A stretch of 64,000 bases of DNA, taken from sequence record MW272540.1; one strand, given 5' to 3'. The translations under genes and the position numbers were made by a program. The notes below the pieces were generated by a model, which ran no database searches, was not told the origin of the DNA, and saw nothing but the letters and a program-made list of their open reading frames with translations. This document shows, in pieces, positions 14,707-58,593 of the stretch (the first letter of the stretch is position 1; each line of letters starts with the position of its first letter).

Positions 14707-14829
14707 TTTTATTTTCCTTTAAGGTTTATATTTTAAAAAGTTTTCGGATGAAAGAACCATTTCCTTCTCTCCTTACAAAATTATTTAGGGGTGATTTTTT
14801 ATAGTGTTTTTAACCACCCCTGAAATTAA

Positions 14830-15672
14830 TTACCAGTAAACGTATTGCTTAATGGACTCGTCGATTTTGGTGGATTTAGATTTCTTATCTTCGTCTTTAT
14901 CCTTACCTTTATCGTCTTTGTCTTTGCCTTCACCTTCGTCTTCGGTGTCATCTTTCTTAAAGTTCAGTTTGTCTTTATCTTCCTGCTCATTAAGATTGGT
15001 GGCTTTGGTTTCTACTTTTTGTGAAACCATCTCAACCAAAGAACCAATACGAGATTTGAATGCGTCAGCATCACCGAAAGTAATTCCCTCGCTCAAAGTC
15101 ATAACCTGTTCTTGTTGAATAACAGTCAGATCCTTAATAGACTCGGAAAGAATAGATTCACGCTCTTTACTCTGCAAAGATTCGGTCAGACTAGTATTTT
15201 TTGTCAGAAGAGTATTAATCTTCTCGTGTGCTTCGGAAAGTTCGGACTCCATTTCTGCAACAACATCGATAGACTCTTCAGGTACATGTACGTTATGTGC
15301 AACAAATGCCTCTTTCAGAGTTGCCAACAGACTTTCTGTCATTTGGGACTTAATACCAGATTGGATTGCAACTTTGTTGTCTTCCATAAACTGTTCTGTC
15401 AGGTGCTCAAAATAACCATCCAGAGTTTGCATCAGTTCTTCGTTTTTCTGGCGAGCAGCTTCTTCAACCAGTTCATCACTACGAGCGGCTAGTGCTTCGA
15501 TGTGTGATTCAGCCAGTCGAACGGCTTCGGAACGAACTTTAGCCTGAAAAACATCAGTCAGAGTTTCCTTAACACTTTCGTTTAATTGAACCCCTTCAAG
15601 CGCCTTGCTCAAAGCATCAGATTCAATAGTGATATTTTTAGCTTCACTAAGCAGTTGGTCTTTAATAGACAT
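14830..15672 (-). CDS. gp22: Prohead core scaffold
   Basis: Acidic coiled coil, VDVVAEME-like SIDVVAEME; synteny. Confidence 0.9.
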   Translation of the reverse strand: MSIKDQLLSEAKNITIESDALSKALEGVQLNESVKETLTDVFQAKVRSEAVRLAESHIEALAARSDELVEEAARQKNEELMQTLDGYFEHLTEQFMEDNKVAIQSGIKSQMTESLLATLKEAFVAHNVHVPEESIDVVAEMESELSEAHEKINTLLTKNTSLTESLQSKERESILSESIKDLTVIQQEQVMTLSEGITFGDADAFKSRIGSLVEMVSQKVETKATNLNEQEDKDKLNFKKDDTEDEGEGKDKDDKGKDKDEDKKSKSTKIDESIKQYVYW

Positions 15673-15696
15673 TGGGTTTTTCCTTATAATTGAAAA

Positions 15697-16383
15697 TTAA
15701 CTTTTTAATGCTTCGATTAAATTCTTAATCGCCTCATCATCTGTATTATTTAGGGGTTCATTTTTTGACTCATTCATACGATAAGCATTTGTATAAGCAC
15801 TAGGAGCACTCGGACCCCAAACAACGTCAACACCAACAGTTAGTTTATATCCCTCTTGAACCTCATTAAGCCCCTTAGAATTACGTTTTAGAGACCCCAG
15901 TCCACGAGAACTAACACCGGGAACCCAACCAGCGCGAATTAAAGCCGCAACTTTATCACCTTCTGCACCATCACCCTCGACAATTCTAGCCTTACCCCAA
16001 ACATCATTTCCTTTCCACCATAGTTTTTCAATAACCAAGGCAGCATGTTTAGGATCTGGATAAGATCTATTTCCGGGGTGATTAAGTTCACCAATAGATT
16101 GTTTGATATTAACTTGCTCTTTTATATATTTATCAACTGCCTTTTCCAAAATCTTTTTCGGATAAATCCGACCATTTCCATTTGGAATTTCAGCTTGAAG
16201 GAAAATACCCTCTATATACAAATTACCAGTATCTTTATCGTTGTATGATTCAACGAGTAACCCTTTACCATTACTCTCTGAAACACCTTCAGGACAACCC
16301 CAATTTTCAATTAGGAGTTTAACGTCTGATGGTTTTCCCGAATCTCTTCCTTCCCAAGTTTCGTTTATTGTGTCCATGATCAA
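15697..16383 (-). CDS. gp21: Prohead protease
   Basis: LYIEGIFLQAE, GELNHP, GWVPGVSSRGLG, VDVVWGPSAP. Confidence 0.95.
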   Translation of the reverse strand: MIMDTINETWEGRDSGKPSDVKLLIENWGCPEGVSESNGKGLLVESYNDKDTGNLYIEGIFLQAEIPNGNGRIYPKKILEKAVDKYIKEQVNIKQSIGELNHPGNRSYPDPKHAALVIEKLWWKGNDVWGKARIVEGDGAEGDKVAALIRAGWVPGVSSRGLGSLKRNSKGLNEVQEGYKLTVGVDVVWGPSAPSAYTNAYRMNESKNEPLNNTDDEAIKNLIEALKS

Positions 16384-16850
16384 AGCCCCATAGAATGACG
16401 CTTGCGCATTGCCTTTTTATACTTACGTTGGGCTCTTACTTGGATAGACGGGTTTGCCCGCTTGGTTTTAACTGCATGTCGTGCAATTTGACGCCGTTGG
16501 CTCTTACTAAGACCAGTGGTCTGTGTAGCCCGACGCTCACGAGTAGCCCGGTCATGAATACGAGTAACCGCACCCATGGAGTTGACACGCTTAACCAAAA
16601 CCTCATTTAGATCGGTTTCATTTTCAAGAATAGAGATAATAGCCAAAGCTTCGATTGCATTATCTGCGATCATATTTTCGGCGATAATATATGCATCATC
16701 ACCAAAAGTTTCCAAAAGCTTTTGTGCTTTAGGTGCAGAAGATTCGATACATTCGGAAATTAGTTGTGTGAGTAAATCATACTCTACATCAGATTCAAGA
16801 ATGCGCGAACCTTTTACACCCCATTTAGAAATAACATCGGTTTTTTCCAT
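16380..16850 (-). CDS. gp68: Prohead core protein
   Basis: QTTGLSKSQRRQIARHAVKTK...RAQRK. Confidence 0.9.
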   Translation of the reverse strand: MEKTDVISKWGVKGSRILESDVEYDLLTQLISECIESSAPKAQKLLETFGDDAYIIAENMIADNAIEALAIISILENETDLNEVLVKRVNSMGAVTRIHDRATRERRATQTTGLSKSQRRQIARHAVKTKRANPSIQVRAQRKYKKAMRKRHSMGL

Positions 16851-33886: not shown

Positions 33887-36028
33887 TTATTCCACTCTTA
33901 GCCATCTATGGGCGGTTGCTGTCGGTTGAACAATCCCAATAGGGTTAACTGGGGCATTTGGTCTGGTATATACAAAATCTTCTTTGTATTTTTTGAAGCC
34001 CGGACCTTGTTCGTCAGGGTCATATTGACACCCACCAATTAGAACATCACCATTAGGATCTGCAATAAGTGCCTTTTCGGTACTTGTTGTTCCCGGTGTG
34101 TTTTCTGGTAGGATCACAACCTCATTTTCACCAACAAATCCACCAGAGCTGTGTCTAGGTTGTCCGTTTACATCAAGATCTTGATGGTTCAAACCATATA
34201 TTGGGTCATTTGGGTTTTCACTATTCCAACCAGCAATTGTCATCCCTTCTGCCCAACGAACCCAAGTACCCATTCCCATATAAGTCGCGGGGTTGTTGGG
34301 GTTGTGTGCGTTTTCATAAACAGTCCCAACCGGATGGAAAATATCAAACATCATTTGAATGGTGTTTACGCTAACACCCATTTGATCATTCGGGTCTGCT
34401 TGTACTGTTTTTTGGCTTGGGTTATACGGGTCTGAATATTTGATCTTCCCGCTAATGTTTAGCTGATTGCTTGCGACATATTTACTATCCGTTTCTTGAA
34501 TGATGTCTTCCAGATCCAAGAGTGAACCAATGTCATTGTTAAACCAACGAATTGTAATAATGTCACCATGGTCCAACGGTTCGTTAATTACAAACTCTCT
34601 CATTCTTCCATTAGCATCTTCTACCGGTCCAAAGTCTGCACCAGAGGAAACCCAAACACCACCCTGAACAATACAAGATTCCTCGGTGATCGCGTCTGCA
34701 CCGTCACAAACAAAGAACGGAATATCAGCTGAACCAGCTTTCAAAAGCTGTCTACCGTTAATAAGGATCTCTAAAGTTTTTGGGTTGAACGATTCACTTT
34801 CTTGGAAACCAAACTCACTAATACTAAAGCGATATTTAGCGGCAAGGTCACCAACAAATCTACGCCCTAACTCGGTTTCGTAATCCACCGGAGCTAATGA
34901 ACTAGAATATACCCGTATTGAACCAGTTTCATAAGAGCTACGGAAGGTAGCAAACCCATCCAAGAATGTTTCTACAACGATAACATCACCTAGTTCGCAA
35001 GGTTTGGTTAGTCTGATGGTATAACCATCTAGCGCAGCAATACTACTCATACCAACGTTTAAAGTAACTTGAGCAGTCCCTTTAAATGCAGCCAAAATAT
35101 CAGGCGTTGCACTATTTGAAACATATTCCTTAGTTATATTATCCAGTTCAAATATATAAGAGCTTCCACCAAAAGCAACTGTCATATACTGAACATTCAA
35201 TGGGACTTTATCCAAATCGAATTTAATATAGGACAATCCGGTACTTTCTCTCGAATAAAACCTGATAATATCGGTATTTTCCACTTTTCCAACGATGGAA
35301 CCACCAGTGTTTTTAATGAATCCGTAAGACATACCACCCAAAGAAGCTGGGGTAACCTTAATTTGGACTGGAGGAGCAACACTAGCAGAAACAACAGAAC
35401 CGTAATTCGATTCGGAACTTAATTTGCTACCATAATACAGAATGTTGCCGCGCTTATATACGTTGATTGCTTGTGTGTTATAACCAGACGGGAAAATATC
35501 TACAAAATCGGTCTGACCTTCAGTTGCAATAAATTCCCTCTTAATAACACTAGACATATCACCAGATTTGATTTCACCAACATACTTACTAGCAACATAA
35601 TCCCAGTTCCCCGGAGAGCAATAAACTAATTCAACGTCCATATTGTTTCTGTCAAGACGATGAACACCCGGAGACCCTTTTATTGTGTTGGTCCCGCTTG
35701 GGATCAGAGTAACTGGGTTAGCTCCCCAAGTTCCAATAACATCCCGAAGACGAATCACCTTTCCATAATCCGATGGTGAACCAAGAGGGAGATTAACGGT
35801 TATCTTCCCGGTTGTGGTGTTAATGACCCACGCTTGACCCATAATACAAACTAAATTATGTGTATGGTCAGAATAAGGTTTCCATGCACCGGCAGCATGG
35901 GGGATATTACCATCCCCAAGGTTGTAATAAAGTTCGTCAAAGTTGTCGTTTATCTTCGAACCACCTTTGCGAAGGTAATCACCGGTTCCGTCATCAACAC
36001 GATTACCAATTATAATTTTCTGTTTCAT
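33887..36028 (-). CDS. gp10: Baseplate wedge/tail pin gp10
   Basis: MKQKIIIGNRVDDGTGDYLRKGG, ELVYCSPG, HPVGTVYENAHNPNNPATYMG. Confidence 0.93.
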   Translation of the reverse strand: MKQKIIIGNRVDDGTGDYLRKGGSKINDNFDELYYNLGDGNIPHAAGAWKPYSDHTHNLVCIMGQAWVINTTTGKITVNLPLGSPSDYGKVIRLRDVIGTWGANPVTLIPSGTNTIKGSPGVHRLDRNNMDVELVYCSPGNWDYVASKYVGEIKSGDMSSVIKREFIATEGQTDFVDIFPSGYNTQAINVYKRGNILYYGSKLSSESNYGSVVSASVAPPVQIKVTPASLGGMSYGFIKNTGGSIVGKVENTDIIRFYSRESTGLSYIKFDLDKVPLNVQYMTVAFGGSSYIFELDNITKEYVSNSATPDILAAFKGTAQVTLNVGMSSIAALDGYTIRLTKPCELGDVIVVETFLDGFATFRSSYETGSIRVYSSSLAPVDYETELGRRFVGDLAAKYRFSISEFGFQESESFNPKTLEILINGRQLLKAGSADIPFFVCDGADAITEESCIVQGGVWVSSGADFGPVEDANGRMREFVINEPLDHGDIITIRWFNNDIGSLLDLEDIIQETDSKYVASNQLNISGKIKYSDPYNPSQKTVQADPNDQMGVSVNTIQMMFDIFHPVGTVYENAHNPNNPATYMGMGTWVRWAEGMTIAGWNSENPNDPIYGLNHQDLDVNGQPRHSSGGFVGENEVVILPENTPGTTSTEKALIADPNGDVLIGGCQYDPDEQGPGFKKYKEDFVYTRPNAPVNPIGIVQPTATAHRWLRVE

Positions 36029-36029
36029 T

Positions 36030-36956
36030 TTATGCCCCGATTGATTCGATAGACTTAATAAATACGTCGATAATAGCCGTACTTATGTTTGTAATTGTAA
36101 GAACCACCGTACTACCAATTATCGAATATTTGGCATCAAATAAGAGGTTGTCTTCTGGTTGTAATGGTTCTTTCGTCCGGATCCTAGCGTATTCGGTAGA
36201 ATAAACATTTAGGTCGGCAGTGCTACTATTATTTACCATCAGTAAAGTTTCGCAAGATTCTTGCATAGCAGCTGCACCCCGTTGAGTGACAAACATCATA
36301 TGTTTAACCGCGTTATATTGGGTTTTATTAAACAATACTAGGTTACGTTCTGCACCCGGAGCAATACCGGACATAGTTGCAGAATATGAAGTTGCGTTAT
36401 CTCCATATAGGGATTCGATCCGATAATTCCATTTCGAGCCAGCTGAACTAGCCTCAGTAACCCAAAATGTTATTCTGAAATATGGCTTATTCAAAACGAT
36501 GCGGTTTCCAAGGGTTCCGATACTATCACCGCTACCACTGGTTCTGATGATCACTTCTTTACCTGTACCGTATCCAACCGACCCATCACTATTGATAAGT
36601 TCGATACATTCCCCGGCGTGATTACTACCAACTGGTAATGTAATCGTTAGGTCACCAGCACCGTCACGAAGAACAGATACATCATGCATAGAACCATATT
36701 CAACCGGGTTCCCCGATGGTTGTTCTGCACCAGCATAGTAAGCCCTTGTATGCTTTTGGTAGTACCCAGTTGCGTGAAGGGTTTGTACCCTATTACCAAG
36801 TCCGGAAGTTTTACCAATACGATAATCCCCGAATACGTTATAGATACTGTTAAGATCTTGGTTTATCTTAACGCCGCCATCGTGTAGAGTGTCCCCGGTC
36901 CCTTCTTGCCCGCGAACGCCTGTATCGATTAGCTCTTTTGGCTTTTGTACTGACAT
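36030..36956 (-). CDS. gp9: Baseplate wedge tail-fibre connector
   Basis: PKELID.G...GDTLHDGG.KIN, LHATGYYQK. Confidence 0.92.
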   Translation of the reverse strand: MSVQKPKELIDTGVRGQEGTGDTLHDGGVKINQDLNSIYNVFGDYRIGKTSGLGNRVQTLHATGYYQKHTRAYYAGAEQPSGNPVEYGSMHDVSVLRDGAGDLTITLPVGSNHAGECIELINSDGSVGYGTGKEVIIRTSGSGDSIGTLGNRIVLNKPYFRITFWVTEASSAGSKWNYRIESLYGDNATSYSATMSGIAPGAERNLVLFNKTQYNAVKHMMFVTQRGAAAMQESCETLLMVNNSSTADLNVYSTEYARIRTKEPLQPEDNLLFDAKYSIIGSTVVLTITNISTAIIDVFIKSIESIGA

Positions 36957-37017
36957 TGTTATAGATCCTTTTGTTTATAGATTACTTCAGTATTTAGGGA
37001 TTTTTTTAAAAAAGGTA

Positions 37018-37045
37018 TTGCATTGCGGATTCGTTGTGTTATGAT
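37018..37045 (+). promoter_or_regulatory. Sigma70/extended -10 promoter for inserted cassette
   Basis: TTGCAT-N16-TATGAT with TG. Confidence 0.6.
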
Positions 37046-37084
37046 GACCTTGTTGAAACGAAACACCTCTTAATCAAAAAGGAA

Positions 37085-37306
37085 ATGACTATGACTAACG
37101 TACAAATGTTCTTCGGTTCCCGCGCTACTGCTCGTCAAGCCTCCTTCGGTAAAATGACCGACAACGGTCAAGGTTCCGAAAAACGCTGGGCTCGCACGGT
37201 TTCCGTAAATACTAAAGAAGCAACCCAAACCACAATGACACGCAAAGGCCGTCGTGGTGAACAAGTCGCTACCACGGTGGTAGTGAAAAAGGCAAAGAAA
37301 TGGTAA
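37085..37306 (+). CDS. Small basic hypothetical protein
   Basis: AAGGA SD; FGSRATAR..GKMTD.G...RWA. Confidence 0.65.
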   Translation: MTMTNVQMFFGSRATARQASFGKMTDNGQGSEKRWARTVSVNTKEATQTTMTRKGRRGEQVATTVVVKKAKKW

Positions 37307-37310
37307 AACA

Positions 37311-37961
37311 ATGAAAAAGATAGTAAGTGTATGTCTTTTATCGCTATCATTGTTCACAATGACCCCAGCCATCGGAGCATCTTTTGATTGTTCGTTGGCT
37401 GGTACAAAAATTGAGCATATGATTTGTGAAAACGACAATATCAATAAATTAGATGAAGAATTAAACGTTCTTTATAAAAACGCGAGATCAAATCCATCGG
37501 TTGTTTCAGAACAAAAAGAATGGATTAAGATGAGAAATGGTGTCAGTACACCAAGAGAATTGGAAAACATGTATTTGTCAAGAGTTCAAGAACTTAGTTC
37601 GAGGGCTGTGGGAAATACAAAATTCGAAATAGTAAAGCAAAATCGAATCGTTGAGAAAAAGAAGAAAACATTAGAAGAACTGATTGTGTTCATACTTAAA
37701 AACGATGTATACCCACTCGATGGGAAATATTACAGCGTGAAAGAAAGAGCCGATACGGGGGACGATTCTTTAAATGCTTGCTTACAGGATGGGACTTTAA
37801 TGTCAATTACGTTAATTCGTGATAAAATGGTAGATCTTGGTATATATAACAAATACTGGGACCAAGTAAAAACAAAATTATACATCGGTATGTATAACTC
37901 ATCTGTAGAAAGTATAAAAACAGACGAAAAACAAAGAACTCTTTGCAAATTGCAATATTAA
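37311..37961 (+). CDS. Secreted LprI/DUF1311-type lysozyme-inhibitor-like protein
   Basis: Sec signal peptide, then ASFDC..A.T.IE.MIC....LD..L..LY...EQK.WIK.RN. Confidence 0.7.
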   Translation: MKKIVSVCLLSLSLFTMTPAIGASFDCSLAGTKIEHMICENDNINKLDEELNVLYKNARSNPSVVSEQKEWIKMRNGVSTPRELENMYLSRVQELSSRAVGNTKFEIVKQNRIVEKKKKTLEELIVFILKNDVYPLDGKYYSVKERADTGDDSLNACLQDGTLMSITLIRDKMVDLGIYNKYWDQVKTKLYIGMYNSSVESIKTDEKQRTLCKLQY

Positions 37962-37992
37962 AAAAGCCCACTCATAAAAGAGTGGGCTTTTT
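37960..37992. terminator. Bidirectional terminator
   Basis: AAAAAGCCCACTC-ataaaa-GAGTGGGCTTTTT. Confidence 0.85.
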
Positions 37993-37993
37993 G

Positions 37994-38977
37994 TTAGAAT
38001 TGAAAAACTACGTTGAATTCTTCAGTCTGATCCCTAGACCTAATAACGGGTTGGCGGTTATCCATATAGATAATGTTCCCACTATGTCGTTCTAATTGGT
38101 CTGGTGTATAAGTTAACTCAGTCGCTTTGACATCCGGGTCACTAGGTTCTGCCTTCACCAACAGTGGGTTGCAAACTAGCCCCATTTGTCTAAACCCAGT
38201 ATTACCAATTTTACTTGACGCTGGGAAACTGTAACTGTCAAAATAAGCACGAAACCTAAGAGTATCACACTTTATCCGGTTCAGCAAATTATAATCATTT
38301 GGATACCAAGACAACACGTTTTGATATCCCCAGACAGAAGGGTTATCTTTAAGATCGTCTGGTGTTGGAACTACAATATATTCGTTAGAACAATCGTTAA
38401 TTGCAACGTCACTTGGGATAGTATACAGGTATTCCCAAATATAACCATCCTTCATATCAACCCCGTCAGATTTACCAATCGGGAGGATACTTTTAATGGA
38501 TGGGGTCCATTGTTCCCCAATTTTCAAACACTCTTCTTTGGTGATCACTGACTCAATAGAGCAGAGACCATCGCTTGGTACATCTACGCATCGATAAACG
38601 ATCCACCCAGAGCCGATTTCACTCCGGTTATAAGGTGCGGTATTCGTGACAACAATATCCCCAACATGAAACGTCTGTGGATTTGTATATCTCTGATCAC
38701 CCCAGTCCCTACGAGGAACAACCGGGCGGATCATCTCTTTCTGGATCTTCACTGCCCCCAACATTCTAGCCCACACATCAGAAAATCCCTCGGTTGTATC
38801 ATCTGGATATGGCGGCGCAAATTTCGGGTCTGACTCGTTGTCTGCCCAAGCATCTTTTCTTCCAAAATAGGCATAAAGCGTATTTTTTGAAACATCATCA
38901 CCAATTGCATTATAAAAGTTTAAAAGGTTAGCGACCCGAAAGTCGCTGGTAACCTTAGCTCTGTAAATTACTGACAT
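37994..38977 (-). CDS. gp8: Baseplate wedge subunit
   Basis: IYRAKVTSDFR, VVPRRDWGD, GYIWEYLYTIP, SGNIIYMDNRQP. Confidence 0.95.
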   Translation of the reverse strand: MSVIYRAKVTSDFRVANLLNFYNAIGDDVSKNTLYAYFGRKDAWADNESDPKFAPPYPDDTTEGFSDVWARMLGAVKIQKEMIRPVVPRRDWGDQRYTNPQTFHVGDIVVTNTAPYNRSEIGSGWIVYRCVDVPSDGLCSIESVITKEECLKIGEQWTPSIKSILPIGKSDGVDMKDGYIWEYLYTIPSDVAINDCSNEYIVVPTPDDLKDNPSVWGYQNVLSWYPNDYNLLNRIKCDTLRFRAYFDSYSFPASSKIGNTGFRQMGLVCNPLLVKAEPSDPDVKATELTYTPDQLERHSGNIIYMDNRQPVIRSRDQTEEFNVVFQF

Positions 38978-41900
38978 TATTTATTCACCTTAACCTGTGA
39001 TGGACTTACAGGGACAACCAAATTACTGACGTCTCTTGGTAATCCAATATCGTCCTTTAATCTTCTTTCTGATAGTCTCTTGAGATCTGAGAATCTACTA
39101 CTGAACGCACTAAACAATGGACTACCGTCTAATCGTCTCTCAGACGGTGTATAAACAACTCCGCCTATCACCCAATCCGATTCATCGGTATCATAGTTTC
39201 TAGCCTCAAAAACGCTTCCAGTGGACTCGTTGATTGCATTATTCCATGCAGATACATCGAATGGTGTTTGTACCAATTCTTCTTCCATCAATTGACCGGT
39301 AACCGGGTCAAATAGTGGACTAGGATCTAAGAAAGAACCATTAGGATCCTGTATTGTTTTATATTTAGGTGTAAGACTTGGTAAACCAGAATCCCATCTA
39401 AACGATTTGTTAATATCTACCACGGTTTCATTATGAGCCATAGAGATACCACCATTCACAAATACAGTAAGAAGAGTTATACCAATAAATCCAAAACCCA
39501 CCGGGTGGACAAATCGGATCACATCCTCTTTATATCTAGCGGTGTTTAATTCCGACCGGATCCGCATCATGTAATAAGAGCGGTTTCTATTGATATAATC
39601 GATATCCGAATAAGCAAGCTCTTTACCTCGAACACCACGAGTTATTTCACCAGTGAATGAACTAGACTCCGATTTTATTTCTTGTCCCGTTTCGAATTTA
39701 CCAATTAGGTTGTGAATTGTTATTTTCCATCTTAATTGACCATCAACGAATTGACGTTCTATATAAGTAACATTTGCTCTACCAGTTTCGGTGAATATGG
39801 TTCTACCAACTAAGTCCGTACTTATATTTGAAGATTTTACCATAATGTCATAATCAATACCAACTTGTGATTCGATTTCAACATCTACATCAGCGTTATA
39901 AAGCAATTTGAACAGGAATTTATAACTGTCTATTGTTCCTTTAGAACTATAAAAGTTGTTCGCATTGGCTTCAAAAAACTTAACCACCGCATCACGCTTG
40001 TCCTGATCAAGATATATATTTCTTCTTCTCATTTCAGACCAGAGATAAACGAAAGAATCTTTCTCTCTTGGGTATTTCAACTTAATGAAGTTGAGAAGTT
40101 TTCCATACATCGAATCTGTACCATCTGATAGGAACTGAAAATAATATTCAATGAATTTCGAAAAGTTCGAGTCGTTGAAGTAGTATTCCGGACCCATCAC
40201 TTGCAACATTGGCGATATATCTGGGTCAACAAGTCCCTCGGTCTGTGTTGTGTCTACCACTACGTCACGTTCCTGATTAACAAGTTGAGCTTGCATAGCA
40301 ACGTGTTCTGGTCTCCAAATTATAGATGCCTCATCACGAACACGATATGGGAACTCATAATATCCAAATATTTCTCCACCAAGACTATTTTCGCGGTTAT
40401 ATAGACTATGGATCAATATACCATTGCAATATTTGCTGAAGTTTTGGAAATTTATATTATCCAGATAGAAAGTGACTGTACCTTTATCCCAAACTTCTTT
40501 GTTAATATTTCTTTCAGTATCGATTGTATACTGATATTTTGTGGATGGTGTAATAAGAACTATCCGGTTTTCATGGTTTTTCCAAATCCTTTCACCAGTC
40601 ATAGCCATGTAATCAAATCCAGCTTCATTATAATAATTGGCAGGTTTTAATTTAAATTCGCTACCATCTTCGGTTTCCCATTGATATAGGTAAACTTTCT
40701 TATCACTCAAATACCCGAATTCAGAACTATATTTAACAGCGGAATCAACTTCGTCCGGATATTTCAATGGGAGGTCTGTATCAACAACAGTATCAGAATA
40801 TCTATATGTCGCACCAGAAACAAACAGTTTAGTTCCATCTGTACTCATATCAGAATATAGGTGTTCGATGTTATACCTTTCTTCTTCTGTGTTCCCGAAT
40901 ACACGAACCCAAGAACCACCGTCAGGGACTGAAGGTTTCACTATTTGTCCGTTTTCTTCGTACAAGTCAAATACCGCAGGATAAGCGAAATCCGCAACAA
41001 ACCGACCATATTTTACCGGATCGATCACTTTATTAGTGATGTCGGAATATATATCAGCAATGAATTGGAACGAATCATGATTTTCAGGAGATACAAAATT
41101 AACTTCCATCAATACACCGTGGGTTCTACCACGAAATACCCTCGATTCCCATCTGGTGGATACTTGACCAACATGAGACCCATTGGGAAGGAATGTGACC
41201 ATTTCTCTTGAAACGTCGATACCATTAACGTAATTTGAACCATCCGGATCTGTATAATTCAGATCACCAAGAACAAAATCTTCCTTCTTATATATCTCGT
41301 CAAAACGATATACACCAGAATAGCTAGATTTTTTAACTTGATGTGGGTCCCGCTTATCACCACCCGGTTCTATTTCACCACTAACCAAGGCATAGCATAC
41401 GTCATTAAGGGAATCCAATTTTTTAACAACAACATTTGGGTTATCACATATTTGATATGAAACAGGATCCCAAATAATTTTTCCGTTGCTATCTACAGGA
41501 CCACCACTAAGCATAATACGACGACAAACACCGTCAGCCGCAGCATACAACCAACGACTAGAAACGGTCTGAGCTTCAACCTTACGGCGAATGTCATCAG
41601 GATATAAAGCAAAAGTACCAAAGAACATTGTAGGGAATGGGATGGTCATATCAGTATCCATCTTAACGAATGTTAATTGATCATCGGACCAATAATATTG
41701 GTCTGAACTAAATCTGACATCGTTAACATTACGACCATAAAAAGCATAGTCATAACCAAGAAGGAATGATGTATTACTGTTCTGGCTCATAACTGTATTA
41801 CCAGCCGGATATCCAATCCGGTCAGTTACTGCTTGGTAATAATACCAGTTCTGACCACCATCATTTGTAACTTTACAATAGTTCTGATATTTCTCGAAAG

Positions 41901-42474
41901 AGTAAACAATACGCTTGTTCACACCTAGATATATATTTTTCACATCCTTACAGATACGAGACACAGAACCAAGAATTTCGTGATATTCACTATCTTCCGC
42001 AATAAAATTCTCAACGTTTGTTACGTTAGCAATACCCGGATCATAGATAAAATATTCATTCATCAAACTTGCTTGTAACCGACCATTATTAAAATCGATG
42101 TAATCCATTTTATTTTTATAGAGTTTTTTGTCTATAAATTCAAAAGACGGTATGAACTTCTCCATAGTTGTTATTTGATATGCGTTGGTTGAAAAGGTTT
42201 CTATTACATCACTAACAACCCAATCCCCACGTTCCATACCCGGATGTGTTACCAAAACTCTAAATTTATATTTCGTATCTGGAATTAAAGATGAACTAAA
42301 ATATTCGGGGGTGTATTGCACCCCCAATTGTGTCCAACTTTCAACCCCACCCGAAACAAGTGTGTATTCTACAAGATAGAAAAAGTTAGATCCAACGTCA
42401 TCCCATTTTAAATGAATGAAGTTAGCACCCAACATCGACACACGAAGACTTGTTATTGAAGGGGATTTAATCAT
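38977..42474 (-). CDS. gp7: Baseplate wedge initiator
   Basis: IKSPSITSLR, VFGNTEEER, YPREKD, KGTIDSYKFLFK, FVHPVGFGFIG. Confidence 0.93.
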   Translation of the reverse strand: MIKSPSITSLRVSMLGANFIHLKWDDVGSNFFYLVEYTLVSGGVESWTQLGVQYTPEYFSSSLIPDTKYKFRVLVTHPGMERGDWVVSDVIETFSTNAYQITTMEKFIPSFEFIDKKLYKNKMDYIDFNNGRLQASLMNEYFIYDPGIANVTNVENFIAEDSEYHEILGSVSRICKDVKNIYLGVNKRIVYSFEKYQNYCKVTNDGGQNWYYYQAVTDRIGYPAGNTVMSQNSNTSFLLGYDYAFYGRNVNDVRFSSDQYYWSDDQLTFVKMDTDMTIPFPTMFFGTFALYPDDIRRKVEAQTVSSRWLYAAADGVCRRIMLSGGPVDSNGKIIWDPVSYQICDNPNVVVKKLDSLNDVCYALVSGEIEPGGDKRDPHQVKKSSYSGVYRFDEIYKKEDFVLGDLNYTDPDGSNYVNGIDVSREMVTFLPNGSHVGQVSTRWESRVFRGRTHGVLMEVNFVSPENHDSFQFIADIYSDITNKVIDPVKYGRFVADFAYPAVFDLYEENGQIVKPSVPDGGSWVRVFGNTEEERYNIEHLYSDMSTDGTKLFVSGATYRYSDTVVDTDLPLKYPDEVDSAVKYSSEFGYLSDKKVYLYQWETEDGSEFKLKPANYYNEAGFDYMAMTGERIWKNHENRIVLITPSTKYQYTIDTERNINKEVWDKGTVTFYLDNINFQNFSKYCNGILIHSLYNRENSLGGEIFGYYEFPYRVRDEASIIWRPEHVAMQAQLVNQERDVVVDTTQTEGLVDPDISPMLQVMGPEYYFNDSNFSKFIEYYFQFLSDGTDSMYGKLLNFIKLKYPREKDSFVYLWSEMRRRNIYLDQDKRDAVVKFFEANANNFYSSKGTIDSYKFLFKLLYNADVDVEIESQVGIDYDIMVKSSNISTDLVGRTIFTETGRANVTYIERQFVDGQLRWKITIHNLIGKFETGQEIKSESSSFTGEITRGVRGKELAYSDIDYINRNRSYYMMRIRSELNTARYKEDVIRFVHPVGFGFIGITLLTVFVNGGISMAHNETVVDINKSFRWDSGLPSLTPKYKTIQDPNGSFLDPSPLFDPVTGQLMEEELVQTPFDVSAWNNAINESTGSVFEARNYDTDESDWVIGGVVYTPSERRLDGSPLFSAFSSRFSDLKRLSERRLKDDIGLPRDVSNLVVPVSPSQVKVNK

Positions 42475-46384: not shown

Positions 46385-48202
46385 GTTAATATTCACAGTA
46401 GAACCACTAATCTCAGTTGTACCAGCAGAAGTGATAAGACTTTGTGCAGCTTGAGATTTATAATTTCCCCCAACTGTCGATGTAAAATTCCCACCGACAT
46501 TTAGATTATAATCCCCATCCACCGAATTATCACAGTTACCAGCCACTTGAGCAGTTAGGTTTCCTTCTATATTGCTATCTACGTTCCCGTTTACAGTTTG
46601 AGTAACGTTACCTTTAACTATTTGGTCCATATTTCCATGTATAGTTTCAGTAACATTTCCTTTCACAACTTGGGATAAGTTCCCGTCAACTTGTTGAGTG
46701 CAGTTACCCATAACATAAACAGTCGCATTACCTTCCACAACCGCTTGATAATCACCTTTCACGTTCAAATATTTATTGGCTAAATCTATTTCGAAATTCT
46801 CACCATATATCTTAGTTACTTGACGACCGTCACCAGACCACTCTATAAACGTCCCAGAGGGGTGTTTTCTATGGTATCTCTCAGCACCCGGAGTATCGTC
46901 GAACTCTTGAACATGCCCAGATTCAGACTCGTATACGTGGTTGTATGGGTATTGAGCCCGATACGCACTCTTTGGTTCTTCAAAAAGCAAACCATCATCG
47001 CGGGGAACTGGGGGAACTGACGGATCTTCTTCATCGTCCAAAGGAACTGGATCGGAAGTGACAGCAACCATCCTCATAAACGACGCAGTTGGAATATTAA
47101 TACTGTCAGTATCCAAAGACATGGTTCTTAAAGATATGGGGGGTGTCGGTTCTTGTGGGACCATCACACCATAAGATTCTAGGTTTCCGGTTAACACGAT
47201 CCTAGAAACTCGATTTGCCCGTCCGGGGGTTTGTTTAGCCCAGAGTGAATCTAACATCCCCTGTTGGGCTTCCTTCCATCGTTCGTTGTACATATGATCA
47301 AGCGTAGTTCTAAACTTAGCTAGACCACCGGCACCCATCTGAAAGGCCATGTTCTCTAAAGCCATCTGTCTAGACCGGTTAACTTTGACATAAACCTTTC
47401 TGATGTTTTCAAATCTCATCATATCAGATCTGGTTTTTTGGATATCCTCACTAAACAGCTTTGAAACGTCCTCTGGCGATATTGTTCCACCTTTGACAGG
47501 ATGACCTAGCTGTTGGGTTAGAATCGCGTCTATACGCGCTACGTCTCTTGTTTTCTCATGAATAATCAAGTGACCAATCCCGATGGTAGGATATCCCAAA
47601 GAATCCAAATACCATACGTTTCTAACGCCTTCATCACCCTTCAGCATTTTTTCTATGGTGAAATTCGGGTCATCGTCTTCTGGGATCTCATCTATGGGTC
47701 TGTCATCTGGTGCAACTGCAATAGAAGAGTTTTCATCTTGAGTATATACACCAAGAGGCATACCGTCAATTGATGGGGGGGCACTCCCGTTTATACTATC
47801 ACCCTTCTGACCACCACCCGCTAATATATTCACGTCATTTCCGATATATCTCGGAAATTGACCGAATGGGTCACAAAAACCTTTCAAAGTATTTGGTTGT
47901 TGAACATAGGATCCGGGGATTGTAAAAAGGATAAGACCATCTTGTTTAAATGCGTCCCTGAATATCCCACCAACCCAACTACCTTCAACTAAACCAGTCG
48001 GACTATCACCAACCCCAGATATAGATGCTGATGTAGTTGGTAGAGCCGAGTGAAACCAAAGTAATTCATCTGTTGGGATACCTAGCAAATCATTTTTTGA
48101 TTTTTGGTCCGTGTGTATCCCCATTACACGGACCCTATATCTACCTTGTTTTAGAGGGTCGAATCTATCCTCAACCACCCCAAAAAACCATTCTAAATTC
48201 AT
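46382..48202 (-). CDS. gp5: Baseplate hub/tail lysozyme
   Basis: FFGVVEDRFDPLKQGR, T4-lysozyme DEG..Y.DSLGYPTIGIGH, AQYPYNHV, VxG beta-helix repeats. Confidence 0.97.
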   Translation of the reverse strand: MNLEWFFGVVEDRFDPLKQGRYRVRVMGIHTDQKSKNDLLGIPTDELLWFHSALPTTSASISGVGDSPTGLVEGSWVGGIFRDAFKQDGLILFTIPGSYVQQPNTLKGFCDPFGQFPRYIGNDVNILAGGGQKGDSINGSAPPSIDGMPLGVYTQDENSSIAVAPDDRPIDEIPEDDDPNFTIEKMLKGDEGVRNVWYLDSLGYPTIGIGHLIIHEKTRDVARIDAILTQQLGHPVKGGTISPEDVSKLFSEDIQKTRSDMMRFENIRKVYVKVNRSRQMALENMAFQMGAGGLAKFRTTLDHMYNERWKEAQQGMLDSLWAKQTPGRANRVSRIVLTGNLESYGVMVPQEPTPPISLRTMSLDTDSINIPTASFMRMVAVTSDPVPLDDEEDPSVPPVPRDDGLLFEEPKSAYRAQYPYNHVYESESGHVQEFDDTPGAERYHRKHPSGTFIEWSGDGRQVTKIYGENFEIDLANKYLNVKGDYQAVVEGNATVYVMGNCTQQVDGNLSQVVKGNVTETIHGNMDQIVKGNVTQTVNGNVDSNIEGNLTAQVAGNCDNSVDGDYNLNVGGNFTSTVGGNYKSQAAQSLITSAGTTEISGSTVNIN

Positions 48203-58009: not shown

Positions 58010-58240
58010 ATGCAAGAACAAGTACAACAACTTCAACAAGTAATTCTGGAACTGAAAGCTCGTATCTTTGATATCAGTGAAGCCCAATCCCGTAAAGAGC
58101 AAGAACAGGCTCAGATCTATCAGCATTTTGCAGACGCACTTGGTCTAGACAAAGAAGAAGCAACCCGACTGGATGCTTATCTAGCTAAGATCGAAAGTCT
58201 GAAGGCTGGTCAAAAACCGGTTGTTGACAGCGGCGAATAA
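58010..58240 (+). CDS. gp57A: Tail fibre chaperone
   Basis: ILELKARIFD; follows gp1 as in T4. Confidence 0.75.
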   Translation: MQEQVQQLQQVILELKARIFDISEAQSRKEQEQAQIYQHFADALGLDKEEATRLDAYLAKIESLKAGQKPVVDSGE

Positions 58241-58251
58241 TGATGTAAGAT

Positions 58252-58283
58252 AAGGGGGTGACGTAGGTCGTCCCCTTATTTTT
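58252..58283 (+). terminator. Rho-independent terminator
   Basis: AAGGGGTGAC-gtag-GTCGTCCCCTT followed by T-rich sequence. Confidence 0.6.
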
Positions 58284-58293
58284 TGGAGTCTTT

Positions 58294-58593
58294 ATGAAAA
58301 AGAGATACAAACTTGTTGACAAGGCTGGTTTTGTTATGGCATCGTATGAACCAGAAATCGTATCAAATGAGCCGGTCATCGAGCCAGTATTTATTGAAGA
58401 AAGGAAACTTTTGGCTGACCTATTGACTGATGTTTCGTTTACGGTTACTATTGCAAAACGATATAAACAAGTCGGTATTACTTCTAAACAGATTAGTAAG
58501 ATCCCGGTTGCAGAGTTTCACGAAAAAACAAAAGATTTTCAGTTTTACTTGATTATGATGGAAGAGTTTGATAAATTCTTTATCGAAGCCTAA
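58294..58593 (+). CDS. Hypothetical protein
   Basis: GGAG SD. Confidence 0.6.
   Translation: MKKRYKLVDKAGFVMASYEPEIVSNEPVIEPVFIEERKLLADLLTDVSFTVTIAKRYKQVGITSKQISKIPVAEFHEKTKDFQFYLIMMEEFDKFFIEA

What the first reader, a model, noticed from the sequence alone, without database searches (positions are those of the whole stretch)
37018..37992. Early-promoter cassette with a secreted LprI-type lysozyme inhibitor inserted antisense between gp9 and gp8
Seen: own sigma70-like promoter, a small basic ORF, a signal-peptide ASFDC..IC protein and a bidirectional terminator, splitting the late baseplate operon; gp9 has its own CTAAATA at 36991. Known: LprI/DUF1311 proteins inhibit lysozyme, and T4 Spackle is a periplasmic inhibitor of the gp5 tail lysozyme. 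Inference: a non-homologous Spackle analogue for superinfection exclusion or lysis control, or protection against animal lysozyme.
Basis: partly seen in the sequence, partly recalled or inferred. Interest (0 to 1): 0.65.

Follow-up and report, generated by a model that had tools for sequence, protein, structure and literature searches.

The report
Early gene cassette with secreted DUF1311 protein
A T4-like Aeromonas phage carries a self-contained early-expressed two-gene insert between two baseplate genes, and its secreted protein belongs to a family only loosely linked to lysozyme inhibition, so the cassette is real but its proposed job is untested.

Summary
The window is Aeromonas phage ZPAH1 (100% identity). 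A roughly 960-bp plus-strand cassette lies between gp9 and gp8. It has an early-type promoter, a 71-aa basic ORF, a 216-aa signal-peptide protein and a two-way terminator hairpin. Only ZPAH1 and Aswh_1 among deposited phages carry it. Sister phages have just a late promoter and a hairpin in an 80-bp gap, so the operon break existed before the insertion.

The cassette fits the known promoter-early/stem-loop (PeSL) type of mobile cassette in T4-like phages. The 216-aa protein has an N-terminal DUF1311 ("LprI", PF07007) domain that only just reaches threshold. Its C-terminal domain is confidently modelled and matches no solved fold.

Sister phages carry one roughly 30%-identical homologue beside RNA ligase 2. 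ZPAH1 lacks exactly that gene, so the cassette copy is a divergent replacement at a new site.

"Lysozyme inhibitor" is not established. According to the Salmonella ScwA paper, LprI's activity is attributed to its MliC domain, which is absent here, and a DUF1311-only protein failed to protect against lysozyme. DUF1311 proteins do act as periplasmic immunity proteins against cell-wall toxins. A periplasmic inhibitor role is therefore plausible but unproven. The complex prediction could not be run.

The parts
36030..36956 (-). gp9 baseplate wedge / tail-fibre connector (left flank; not part of the cassette)
   Evidence: PF07880 at 1e-25 and phrog_967 at 1.7e-104. Annotated as such in MW272540.
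36990..36997 (-). gp9 late promoter core CTAAATAC, belonging to the phage backbone
   Evidence: The motif occurs 10 times in the window against 2.7 expected, and no shuffle reached 10. It is conserved at the same place in CC2, avDM6 and phage 65, which lack the cassette.
36999..37016 (.). A/T tract (T7 then A6) between the divergent late and early promoters. This is the left junction of the insertion and a probable UP-like element.
   Evidence: Sequence read directly. Homology with the cassette-free relatives ends here. It aligns with the A-rich tract upstream of the paralogous early promoter.
37018..37045 (+). Early (sigma-70-type) promoter: -35 TTGCAT, 16-nt spacer, extended -10 TGT-TATGAT
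   Evidence: It aligns with the promoter of the paralogue at record 58.4 kb. It fits the promoter family seen upstream of at least 6 early genes of the same phage. The generic scanner missed it. No transcript data exist.
37046..37090 (+). Conserved early leader (CCTTGTTGAAACGAAAC ... AAAAAGGAAATGAC) with a Shine-Dalgarno AGGA
   Evidence: The same leader follows other early promoters of ZPAH1. There is an exact TTGTTGAAACGA at 37050-37061. AAAAAGGAAATGAC is shared with both paralogues.
37091..37306 (+). 71-aa basic protein of unknown function, one of three paralogues in the genome
   Evidence: phrog_8445 at 9e-27. Paralogues lie at record 58184-58399 (80% aa identity) and 4996-5196 (48%), each the first gene behind an early promoter. 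Positions 37076-37205 are about 98% identical in DNA to the 58-kb copy, against 60-80% in the flanks. No hit in Pfam, NCBIfam, PADLOC, PDB or the Atlas.
37311..37379 (+). Signal peptide (residues 1-23: MKK, hydrophobic core, IGA|S) of the 216-aa protein
   Evidence: Sequence read directly. This N-terminus is conserved in all full-length homologues. The GenBank start at 37359 would cut it off. There is no lipobox.
37380..37610 (+). DUF1311 / 'LprI' (PF07007) helical domain with the SFDC...IC cysteine pair and the Q..W...R motif
   Evidence: PF07007 at 22.1 bits against a cut-off of 22, and 22.6 bits in the six-frame search. phmmer found 2492 relatives, and 103 of the 119 proteins scanned (the query plus its 118 best hits) carry PF07007. 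The AF2 model has pLDDT 85-92 here. The best structural match is 6ar7 at Z 9.1; the DUF1311 structure 3gi7 gives Z 5.6.
37611..37658 (+). Low-confidence linker (residues 101-116)
   Evidence: pLDDT below 50 for residues 100-116. Length and sequence vary among homologues.
37659..37961 (+). C-terminal domain (residues 117-216, plus the stop codon): helix, beta-hairpin, three helices, with conserved Cys157 and Cys212. No known fold match.
   Evidence: AF2 model of the domain alone: pLDDT 91, pTM 0.82. Best PDB match is Z 5.0, over a helical hairpin only; Foldseek E-values are all above 1. BFVD returns only the same family. C157 is invariant and C212 nearly invariant. phrog_4675 at 6.5e-31 over residues 9-214.
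37961..37992 (.). Two-way intrinsic terminator hairpin (AAAAAGCCCACTC / GAGTGGGCTTTTT). It replaces the resident backbone hairpin and marks the right junction.
   Evidence: It folds at -21.2 and -21.3 kcal/mol on the two strands, z -6.6 and -6.5. The arms are 13 nt and 100% complementary. avDM6, phage 65 and CC2 have a different hairpin at this position.
37994..38977 (-). gp8 baseplate wedge subunit (right flank; not part of the cassette)
   Evidence: PF09215 at 6.5e-127.

Best explanation
SHOWN. Positions 36999-37992 form a mobile 'promoter-early / stem-loop' (PeSL-type) cassette. In the ZPAH1/Aswh_1 lineage it replaced the resident terminator hairpin between gp8 and gp9. It reads antisense to the late baseplate genes and is insulated from them by its own two-way terminator.

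It carries two genes. The first is a 71-aa basic protein from a three-copy family. The second, probably translationally coupled (stop and start are 4 nt apart), is a 216-aa protein. That protein has a Sec signal peptide, a DUF1311 (PF07007) helical domain, a flexible linker and a C-terminal domain with no detectable relative among solved structures. Two conserved cysteine pairs are present.

Each sister phage checked has exactly one gene of this family, in the slot between RNA ligase 2 and the prohead-protease inhibitor gene. ZPAH1 has lost precisely that gene and instead carries this 30%-identical version at the new site.

INFERRED. The protein is made early and exported to the periplasm, where it is oxidised to a disulfide-bonded form. 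By analogy with DUF1311 immunity proteins of type VI secretion systems, it binds and neutralises a cell-wall-degrading enzyme that reaches the periplasm of the infected cell. The likeliest target is the tail lysozyme of a superinfecting phage or a muramidase-type toxin from competing bacteria. In that case it would work like T4 Spackle without being related to it.

The anatomy and family assignment are near certain. The enzyme-inhibitor mechanism is a minority-to-even bet, and the confidence given refers to that mechanism.
For: Identity and uniqueness of the insertion. Contigs with the same junctions occur in four other public runs.

Early promoter family and leader. Terminator.

PeSL concept (strong sigma-70-like promoter with an AT-rich upstream region plus a stem-loop, flanking ORFans that differ between close relatives): PMC2839356 and PMC4122927.

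Family membership. Conserved signal peptide and cysteines. Domain models.

One family member per phage, with the neighbouring genes conserved at 69-79%.

Full-length homologues sit in accessory, moron-like positions of other mobile elements. These include the int/xis end of lambdoid phage ev099, an enterobacterial region carrying phage-family genes (PF26211, DUF5983), an integrative island in comM, and early regions of other T4-like phages.

Functional analogy: the DUF1311 protein Etsi4 rescues cells from a periplasm-acting toxin (PMC12981562). DUF1311 genes lie next to lysozyme-like or LysM T6SS effectors (PMC9796082; PMC8867033; PMC12135965). The DUF1311 protein ScwA is periplasmic, depends on DsbA and controls the lytic transglycosylase MltD (PMC7933661).

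ZPAH1 and its Aeromonas relatives lack a recognisable Spackle. One bacterial relative fuses two DUF1311 modules to an Imm-type superinfection-immunity domain.
Against: There is no direct evidence of any binding partner.

The PF07007 score is borderline, and the match covers only profile positions 9-70 of 106. The second cysteine pair typical of bacterial DUF1311 domains is missing.

The DUF1311-only protein ScwA did not protect against lysozyme, and the MliC domain credited with LprI's activity is absent here.

Phage Marfa has both Spackle and a homologue, so the two are not simple substitutes.

The gp5 lysozyme domain is the best-conserved part of gp5 among sister phages (81-86%), whereas their DUF1311 proteins are about 30% identical. 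There is therefore no sign of co-divergence.

The C-terminal domain is likely to carry the specificity and gives no functional clue.
Confidence: 0.4

Rival explanations
1. Spackle analogue in the narrow sense. The periplasmic protein binds the gp5 tail-lysozyme domain of superinfecting ZPAH1-like phages and blocks cell-wall penetration.
For: It is early and periplasmic, as Spackle is (PMC7677548). No PF25676 gene occurs in ZPAH1, avDM6, AS-szw or CC2. The DUF1311 family is linked to muramidase-type toxins. Full-length homologues lie in moron positions of prophages, where exclusion genes are typically found. A DUF1311-Imm fusion exists.
Against: Marfa has both Spackle and a homologue. The gp5 lysozyme domain is 81-86% conserved while the candidate inhibitors are 30% identical. 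No binding test was possible.
Confidence: 0.17
2. Phage-borne orphan immunity protein. It protects the infected cell, for the length of the infection, against peptidoglycan-hydrolase effectors injected by the type VI secretion systems of neighbouring bacteria.
For: The only experimentally supported role for DUF1311-only proteins found in the papers read here is T6SS immunity (PMC12981562). Orphan DUF1311 immunity genes are common (PMC9796082). The gene is exchanged between phages, prophages and islands, as immunity genes are.
Against: No homologue examined here lies beside a T6SS effector. The phage family has an extra C-terminal domain and lacks the second cysteine pair of the bacterial domain. 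A lytic infection offers only a short window in which such protection would pay off.
Confidence: 0.1
3. Regulator of host or phage cell-wall enzymes for the phage's own purposes. Either it modulates host lytic transglycosylases as ScwA does, or it holds the phage's own lysozyme in check to time lysis.
For: ScwA (DUF1311, periplasmic, disulfide-bonded) raises MltD levels, and its overproduction lyses cells (PMC7933661). ZPAH1 encodes a T4-type endolysin and rIII-type lysis-inhibition functions.
Against: ScwA carries its DUF1311 domain at the C-terminus and has a different architecture. T4-type endolysins reach the periplasm only late, through the holin, whereas this gene has an early promoter. 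Homologues in prophage moron positions suggest a benefit to the host cell rather than lysis control.
Confidence: 0.1
4. A periplasmic protein unrelated to cell-wall enzymes. In this reading DUF1311 is merely a widespread secreted scaffold module, and the C-terminal domain, which has no known relative, performs a different task such as masking a receptor or transporter, or blocking DNA entry.
For: The N-terminal module is joined to very different partners (ankyrin repeats, SH3, PDZ, Ltp, Imm, membrane domains) and is often repeated in tandem. This suggests a generic module. The C-terminal domain is the part specific to the phage, prophage and island family, and it matches nothing known. Many phage exclusion proteins act on receptors or on DNA entry rather than on lysozymes (own knowledge: T5 Llp, T4 Imm).
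Against: No positive evidence points to any particular alternative target. The functional reports on DUF1311 proteins found in the papers read here all concern cell-wall enzymes or toxins.
Confidence: 0.2

Closest known systems
PeSL (promoter-early stem-loop) ORFan cassettes of T4-like phages (Arbiol et al. 2010, PMC2839356; Comeau et al. 2014, PMC4122927)
   Same: It has a sigma-70-type early promoter with an AT-rich upstream tract and a stable GC-rich stem-loop terminator. These bracket non-essential genes of unknown function. The cassette is present or absent between very close relatives. It brings its own transcription signals and is insulated from its neighbours. A patch of near identity to another early promoter/leader region of the same genome fits recombination between such elements.
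   Different: It lies inside the conserved late baseplate module and reads antisense, rather than in a hyperplastic early region. The target site held only a terminator hairpin and a late promoter, not a full PeSL. Mini-circle intermediates were not tested and cannot be tested here.
DUF1311 / PF07007 'LprI' domain proteins: M. tuberculosis LprI, Salmonella ScwA, the T6SS immunity protein Etsi4, and P. putida PP0307 (PDB 3GI7)
   Same: It has a signal peptide, an N-terminal Cys-x11-Cys motif (SFDC...IC), the Q..W...R motif and a small helical bundle. The Pfam score is at the cut-off. Thousands of phmmer relatives exist, most of which carry PF07007.
   Different: There is no MliC domain (LprI has one) and no lipobox. 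The second cysteine pair of the bacterial domain is replaced. An additional C-terminal domain of about 100 aa, with its own cysteine pair, is shared only with a subfamily found in phages, prophages and islands (phrog_4675).
T4 Spackle (gene 61.3, PF25676), periplasmic inhibitor of the gp5 tail lysozyme (PMC7677548)
   Same: It is a small secreted protein encoded by an early gene of a T4-like phage, and the proposed role is the same.
   Different: There is no sequence relationship, and Spackle does not appear among the structural matches. The ZPAH1 protein is twice as large and has two domains. Marfa encodes both proteins.
Lambdoid-phage 'morons' (own promoter and terminator, a gene useful to the host)
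   Same: It is a self-contained transcription unit inserted between two genes of an unrelated operon. A full-length homologue occupies such a position in lambdoid phage ev099.
   Different: ZPAH1 is a virulent phage, so any benefit applies to the infected cell during the lytic cycle rather than to a lysogen.

Membership tests
PF07007 (LprI / DUF1311) domain family | Score against the Pfam model at or above the gathering cut-off (22 bits) | tested here: met
   22.1 bits, E 2e-4, residues 31-77 against profile positions 9-70 of 106. 22.6 bits in the six-frame search. This is borderline but backed up: the sister-phage homologues score 30-31 bits, and 103 of the 119 proteins scanned (query plus best phmmer hits) carry PF07007.
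PF07007 (LprI / DUF1311) domain family | Conserved N-terminal cysteine pair and the Q..W...R motif | tested here: met
   F25, D26, C27, E35, I38, C39, D48, Y55, Q68, W71 and R75 are invariant or nearly so across relatives.
PF07007 (LprI / DUF1311) domain family | Second conserved cysteine pair (RNxCxxxxC) seen in most bacterial members | tested here: not met
   The consensus of the 119 aligned proteins has RNxCxxxxC. ZPAH1 and the full-length phage subfamily have RNG/K-x-T/S... with no cysteines there.
PF07007 (LprI / DUF1311) domain family | Helical-bundle fold like the solved DUF1311 structure (PDB 3GI7) | tested here: inconclusive
   3gi7_B gives Z 5.6 over 64 residues. The best match is 6ar7_A at Z 9.1 over 72 residues. 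Small helical bundles give such scores by chance.
Proven lysozyme inhibitors (MliC/PliC, Ivy, PliG; the MliC part of LprI) | MliC/PliC beta-barrel domain (PF09864), or another inhibitor fold | tested here: not met
   No such Pfam hit even at E up to 1. The C-terminal domain model is helical with one beta-hairpin. No lysozyme inhibitor appears among the structural matches.
Proven lysozyme inhibitors (MliC/PliC, Ivy, PliG; the MliC part of LprI) | Measured binding or inhibition of a lysozyme | not testable with these tools
A biochemical assay is needed.
T4 Spackle (PF25676) | Match to the Spackle profile | tested here: not met
   No match anywhere in ZPAH1, avDM6, AS-szw or CC2. The same search finds Marfa's Spackle at 98.8 bits.
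PeSL-type mobile cassette of T4-like phages | Sigma-70-like early promoter with an AT-rich upstream region, repeated as a family in the genome | tested here: met
   The promoter's activity itself was not measured.
PeSL-type mobile cassette of T4-like phages | Associated stable stem-loop acting as a terminator | tested here: met
   -21 kcal/mol on both strands, z about -6.6, flanked by A and T runs.
PeSL-type mobile cassette of T4-like phages | Insertion/deletion difference between close relatives, with junctions in the promoter / AT-rich / stem-loop sequences | tested here: met
   The cassette is present in ZPAH1 and Aswh_1 and absent from 20 or more related Aeromonas phages. The left junction is in the A/T tract, and on the right the cassette hairpin takes the place of the backbone hairpin.
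PeSL-type mobile cassette of T4-like phages | Location in a hyperplastic region of non-essential early genes | tested here: not met
   It lies between gp9 and gp8 in the conserved baseplate module.
PeSL-type mobile cassette of T4-like phages | Circular excision product (mini-circle) | not testable with these tools
   Contigs of four public runs show no joint that skips the cassette. Contigs cannot reveal rare circles, so inverse PCR is needed.

The most novel reading that the evidence does not exclude
A two-domain secreted protein family (DUF1311 plus a C-terminal domain with no known fold relative) shared by T4-like phages, lambdoid prophages and integrative islands is a new class of periplasmic inhibitor of incoming cell-wall hydrolases. 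On this reading it is a non-homologous functional counterpart of T4 Spackle, or a phage-carried T6SS immunity protein. Phages would keep exactly one copy and swap divergent alleles, through promoter/terminator cassettes, even into the core baseplate module.
Probability: 0.2. Interest if true: 0.7.

Novelty: new member of a known kind. Interest (0 to 1): 0.35.

Why it matters
If the protein does neutralise a cell-wall hydrolase, it would give Aeromonas T4-like phages, which lack Spackle, their missing superinfection-exclusion factor. Alternatively, it would show that virulent phages carry immunity against bacterial T6SS toxins. It would also provide the first functional handle on the DUF1311 domain in phages, where the domain has been noted since 2006 but never studied (PMC1524935).

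Two points stand regardless of function. First, the locus is a clean natural example of a promoter/terminator cassette landing inside a conserved late structural module without disturbing it, because it replaced a resident terminator. Second, it shows a one-copy-per-genome gene being replaced by a 30%-identical version at a different site.

Practical notes for annotators:
- The 'lysozyme inhibitor LprI family' label propagated on such genes overstates what is known.
- The deposited start codon of ZPAH1_orf00288 probably removes the signal peptide.

Tried and rejected
There is therefore no computational binding test.
- The search for homologous proteins gave only the protein itself and one weak hit. 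The exhaustive HMMER search was needed to find relatives.
- Sequence searches against the PDB, with the single sequence and with a profile, gave nothing.
- Foldseek against the PDB gave no hit with E below 1, for either the whole model or the C-terminal domain.
- VIA-align gave only generic helical matches for the C-terminal domain, best Z 5.0.
- BFVD returned only members of the same family.
- NCBIfam and PADLOC gave nothing for either protein.
- The Atlas gave only DUF1311 clusters, at scores of 0.80-0.82, below its reliability level. It gave nothing for the small ORF.
- Rfam gave only sub-threshold matches driven by the terminator hairpin.
- No public RNA run holds the stretch.
- The lipoprotein reading is rejected. 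The only early cysteine (C8) lies inside the hydrophobic core with no lipobox, and cleavage after IGA fits signal peptidase I.
- 'The cassette split the operon' is rejected. The hairpin and gp9 late promoter are already there in relatives without the cassette.
- Simple transposition of the ancestral copy beside RNA ligase 2 is rejected. The neighbouring genes are 69-79% identical to avDM6, but this gene is only 30% identical.
- Base composition does not point to a foreign source (33.5% GC against 38.7% for the window).
- The co-divergence test against gp5 gave no signal.
Full report
IDENTITY OF THE WINDOW. The region 36900-38050 is 100% identical to Aeromonas phage ZPAH1 (MW272540.1, Straboviridae, Ishigurovirus, host A. 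hydrophila). It is 98.2% identical to Aeromonas phage Aswh_1. No other deposited phage matches it at the DNA level. Window coordinates equal record coordinates minus 124000.

THE OBSERVATION. On the minus strand, gp10 (33887-36028), gp9 (36030-36956), gp8 (37994-38977) and gp7 (38977-42474) are identified by strong Pfam and PHROG matches. The 1037-bp gap between gp9 and gp8 holds two plus-strand ORFs. One is a 71-aa basic protein (37091-37306). The other is a 216-aa protein (37311-37961).

The hairpin at 37961-37992 has 13 perfect pairs. It folds at about -21 kcal/mol on either strand (z about -6.6). A-runs lie on one side and T-runs on the other, so it can terminate transcription in both directions. 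The generic terminator scanner missed it, probably because the A/T runs pair and extend the stem. Rfam gives only sub-threshold matches to leader and terminator families on it.

The gp9 late-promoter core CTAAATAC lies at 36990-36997 on the minus strand. The motif occurs 10 times in the window against 2.7 expected.

THE PROMOTER. The generic sigma-70 scan did not report a promoter upstream of the small ORF, because the -35 box TTGCAT matches only 3 of 6 positions. A better test is comparison within the genome.

The small ORF has two paralogues in ZPAH1, at record 58184-58399 and 4996-5196. Each is the first gene after an intergenic gap in an early-gene region. Their upstream regions, and those of several other early genes nearby, share a recurring arrangement:
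- an A-rich tract;
- a -35 box of the type GT-TTGAC;
- a spacer of about 17 nt;
- a -10 box of the type GAGATACT or TAATACT;
- the leader CTTTGTTGAAACGA;
- in the small-ORF paralogues and two other genes, the ribosome-binding region AAAAGGAAATGAC.

The cassette has the same arrangement: AAAAAAGG-TATTGCAT, 16 nt, TGT-TATGAT, then GACCTTGTTGAAACGAAAC ... AAAAAGGAAATGACTATG. I therefore accept the early-promoter reading on family resemblance. Activity itself was not measured, and no public RNA run holds this DNA.

THE CASSETTE IS AN INSERTION. In more than twenty related Aeromonas phages, the gp9-to-gp7 query matches in two pieces that lie about 960 bp closer together than in ZPAH1. These phages include CC2, AS-szw, AS-sw, P19, phage 65, 65.2 and avDM6.

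In CC2, avDM6 and phage 65 the gp9-gp8 gap is about 80 bp. It holds only the conserved late promoter (GTATTTAGG) and a GC-rich hairpin flanked by A and T runs. So the break in the late operon is ancestral. It is a terminator or attenuator after gp8, followed by a fresh late promoter for gp9.

In ZPAH1, homology to these relatives ends in the A/T tract just beyond the late promoter. It resumes at the gp8 stop codon. The backbone hairpin (AAAAATCCCCAG...CTGGGGATTTTT) is gone, and the cassette's own hairpin (AAAAAGCCCACTC...GAGTGGGCTTTTT) sits in its place.

Contigs from four other public runs, among them two metagenomes, carry the same gp9-cassette and cassette-gp8 junctions at 99% identity. No contig skips the cassette. 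The contigs break at 37048-37194, which is exactly the stretch repeated elsewhere in the genome.

Positions 37076-37205 (ribosome-binding site plus the 5' half of the small ORF) are about 98% identical to the 58-kb paralogue. The flanks are only 60-80% identical. This is a footprint of recombination or gene conversion between early promoter/leader regions.

All this matches the promoter-early/stem-loop (PeSL) cassettes described for T4-like phages. Those are strong sigma-70-like promoters with AT-rich upstream regions plus stem-loop terminators. They bracket ORFans that differ between close relatives and are shuffled by recombination in those signals (PMC2839356; PMC4122927). The unusual point here is the landing site: inside the conserved baseplate module and antisense to it, rather than in a hyperplastic early region.

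THE 216-aa PROTEIN. The N-terminus (MKKIVSVCLLSLSLFTMTPAIGA|SFDC) is a standard Sec signal peptide with an A-x-A-type cleavage site and no lipobox. It is conserved in all full-length homologues. This argues for the ATG at 37311 rather than the deposited start at 37359. The stop codon of the small ORF lies 4 nt upstream, so translational coupling is likely (inference).

Pfam gives PF07007 (LprI, formerly DUF1311) at 22.1 bits against a cut-off of 22, for residues 31-77 only. That is borderline, but the assignment is sound for three reasons:
- An exhaustive phmmer search finds 2492 relatives at E up to 0.001, nearly all through residues 1-100.
- Of the 119 proteins scanned (the query plus its 118 best hits), 103 carry PF07007.
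- The homologues in sister phages score 30-31 bits.

The invariant positions are the family's hallmark: F25, D26, C27, E35, I38, C39, D48, Y55, Q68, W71 and R75. The second cysteine pair of the bacterial consensus (RNxCxxxxC) is missing in the phage subfamily.

AlphaFold2, using ten full-length homologues, gives two confident domains joined by a disordered linker: residues 24-100 and 117-216, with the linker at 100-116. The N-domain matches small helical bundles. The best match is the uncharacterised Burkholderia protein 6ar7 at Z 9.1, and the DUF1311 structure 3gi7 gives Z 5.6. Neither is decisive for a helical bundle.

The C-domain modelled alone has pLDDT 91 and pTM 0.82. It consists of a helix, a beta-hairpin and three helices, with conserved Cys157 and Cys212. 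It has no convincing relative among solved structures. VIA-align gives a best Z of 5.0 over a helical hairpin, and Foldseek E-values are all above 1. Among predicted viral structures it matches only its own family, for example a 'DUF1311 domain-containing protein' of Aeromonas phage 60AhydR15PP.

There is no MliC domain. Neither PADLOC nor NCBIfam has a model for it.

WHERE THE FAMILY LIVES. tblastn finds the N-terminal module in 125 phage records, from Aeromonas, Escherichia (RB49-like), Klebsiella and others. Twenty of these cover at least 80% of the protein.

In avDM6, AS-szw and a metagenomic T4-like contig, the full-length homologue sits in a fixed slot: RNA ligase 2, gene X, [DUF1311 gene], gene Y, prohead-protease inhibitor. 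ZPAH1 has RNA ligase 2 and genes X and Y at 79%, 69% and 73% identity to avDM6 (prohead-protease inhibitor also present), but the DUF1311 gene between X and Y is cleanly missing.

A PF07007 profile search finds exactly one gene in each of ZPAH1, avDM6, AS-szw, CC2 and Marfa. The ZPAH1 copy is only 30% identical to avDM6's. So the lineage keeps one such gene, but ZPAH1/Aswh_1 exchanged the resident allele for a very divergent one at a new site. It is not a simple transposition of the old copy.

Other full-length homologues lie:
- at the int/xis end of the lambdoid phage ev099, where the gene is annotated 'lysozyme inhibitor LprI family protein';
- in an enterobacterial region carrying phage-family genes (PF26211, DUF5983);
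- in a small island inserted in comM, together with an EcoRV-type restriction system and serine recombinases;
- after the primase gene in Klebsiella phage Marfa and, by position and size, in another T4-like contig.

These are all accessory, frequently exchanged positions.

WHAT IS KNOWN ABOUT DUF1311. The Pfam name comes from M. tuberculosis LprI. According to PMC7933661, that protein also has an MliC domain. [quoted passage not shown]

The same paper shows that Salmonella ScwA, a DUF1311 protein without MliC, is periplasmic and depends on DsbA. It raises the level of the lytic transglycosylase MltD and lyses cells when overproduced. It does not affect lysozyme sensitivity. I could not obtain the original LprI paper.

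On the other hand, DUF1311-only proteins with signal peptides are encoded next to lysozyme-like, LysM/transglycosylase and WHIX T6SS effectors as presumed immunity proteins (PMC9796082; PMC8867033; PMC12135965). One of them, EHEC Etsi4, was shown to rescue cells from the periplasm-acting toxin Etse4 (PMC12981562). The domain was noted in phage RB49 as early as 2006, without follow-up (PMC1524935).

So 'binds or controls cell-wall enzymes in the periplasm' is a fair generalisation. 'Inhibits lysozyme' is not established.

MECHANISM. Several points are shown or near-certain:
- It is a mobile early cassette.
- It encodes a secreted two-domain DUF1311-family protein.
- There is one copy per phage, and the allele has been replaced.

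The rest is inferred. The protein is exported early and oxidised in the periplasm. There it binds an enzyme that attacks the wall of the infected cell. Candidate targets are the tail lysozyme of a superinfecting phage (Spackle-like; PMC7677548) or a T6SS muramidase.

In favour of this inference:
- The Aeromonas phages checked have no Spackle gene, while the control search found Marfa's.
- Homologues occupy prophage moron positions.
- One bacterial relative (P0030) fuses two DUF1311 modules to a T4 Imm-type superinfection-immunity domain at 47.6 bits. Another relative carries an Ltp domain.

Against it:
- Marfa has both Spackle and a homologue.
- The lysozyme domain of gp5 is the most conserved part of that protein among sister phages (81-86%), whereas the DUF1311 proteins differ by 70%.
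- The N-terminal module is combined with very varied partners (ankyrin, SH3, PDZ, membrane domains), as a generic scaffold would be.
- The C-terminal domain, probably the specific part, is uninformative.

I put the cell-wall-hydrolase-inhibitor reading at about 0.4 overall. The narrow Spackle-analogue reading accounts for about 0.17 of that.

THE SMALL ORF. The 71-aa protein has a net charge of about +10 and belongs to phrog_8445. It has three copies per genome in this phage group. Its N-terminal motif (FFGSR..AR...FGKM.DNG...RWA) recurs in Erwinia, Salmonella, Hafnia and Listeria phages. No family, structure or Atlas hit gives a function. For this finding its main interest is that it supplies the homology, with its promoter and leader, through which the cassette has recombined.

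VERDICT. The element is a new instance of two known kinds: a PeSL-type cassette and a DUF1311-family secreted protein. Two modestly unusual features are insertion into the core baseplate module and replacement of the resident allele from a different site. The lysozyme-inhibitor/Spackle-analogue function is a reasonable hypothesis that rests on an overstated family name. It remains untested.

Noticed in passing
window 37359 versus 37311 (record 161359 versus 161311): The deposited CDS ZPAH1_orf00288 starts at M17 and so lacks the signal peptide. All homologues align from the upstream ATG at 37311, which is probably the true start.
   Followed up: partly
L007:2679-3030 (record about 58.2-58.5 kb) and L008:2482-2765 (record about 5.0-5.3 kb): There are two further copies of the 71-aa gene, each the first gene behind an early promoter. 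The 58-kb copy is preceded by a complete stem-loop plus promoter (PeSL-like) element. It shares a 125-130-nt patch of about 98% identity with the cassette copy, which suggests gene conversion.
   Followed up: partly
L008:396-4338 and L007:2901-3029, minus strand (ZPAH1 early regions): A recurring early promoter/leader motif precedes many small early genes: GT-TTGAC, about 17 nt, TTTTGAGATACT, then CTTTGTTGAAACGA. The conserved transcribed leader might itself have a regulatory role.
   Followed up: no
P0030 (L033:1559-2539), metagenomic contig: This protein has two tandem DUF1311 modules fused to a C-terminal Imm_superinfect (PF14373) membrane domain at 47.6 bits. It is a natural fusion linking the DUF1311 module to a T4 Imm-type domain.
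   Followed up: partly
L009 (Klebsiella phage Marfa, record 13555-16670): Marfa encodes both a Spackle homologue and a 252-aa DUF1311 two-domain homologue within 3 kb of each other, around the primase gene.
   Followed up: partly
L018-L020 (metagenomic contigs carrying P0028): A full-length homologue lies in a small island inserted into a comM-like (Mg-chelatase) gene. The island also holds an EcoRV-type restriction-modification system, an HTH regulator and two serine recombinases.
   Followed up: no
L031:1-1128 (Aeromonas phage 65): In phage 65 the deposited annotation fuses gp9 and gp10 into one 'gp9plus10' gene. ZPAH1, CC2 and avDM6 have separate gp9 and gp10, and the N-terminus of gp10 also matches the gp9/10 N-terminal family.
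   Followed up: no
window 37454-37478 and 38000-38024: A 25-nt inverted repeat, 80% complementary, links the DUF1311 coding region and the 3' end of gp8. It is probably a chance match.
   Followed up: no
window 47231-47635 (gp5) and L029:1474-1974 (endolysin, record about 205.4 kb): ZPAH1 has two T4-type lysozyme domains: the gp5 tail lysozyme and a 166-aa endolysin encoded just after a long tail-fibre-like gene. These are the obvious test targets for any inhibitor.
   Followed up: partly
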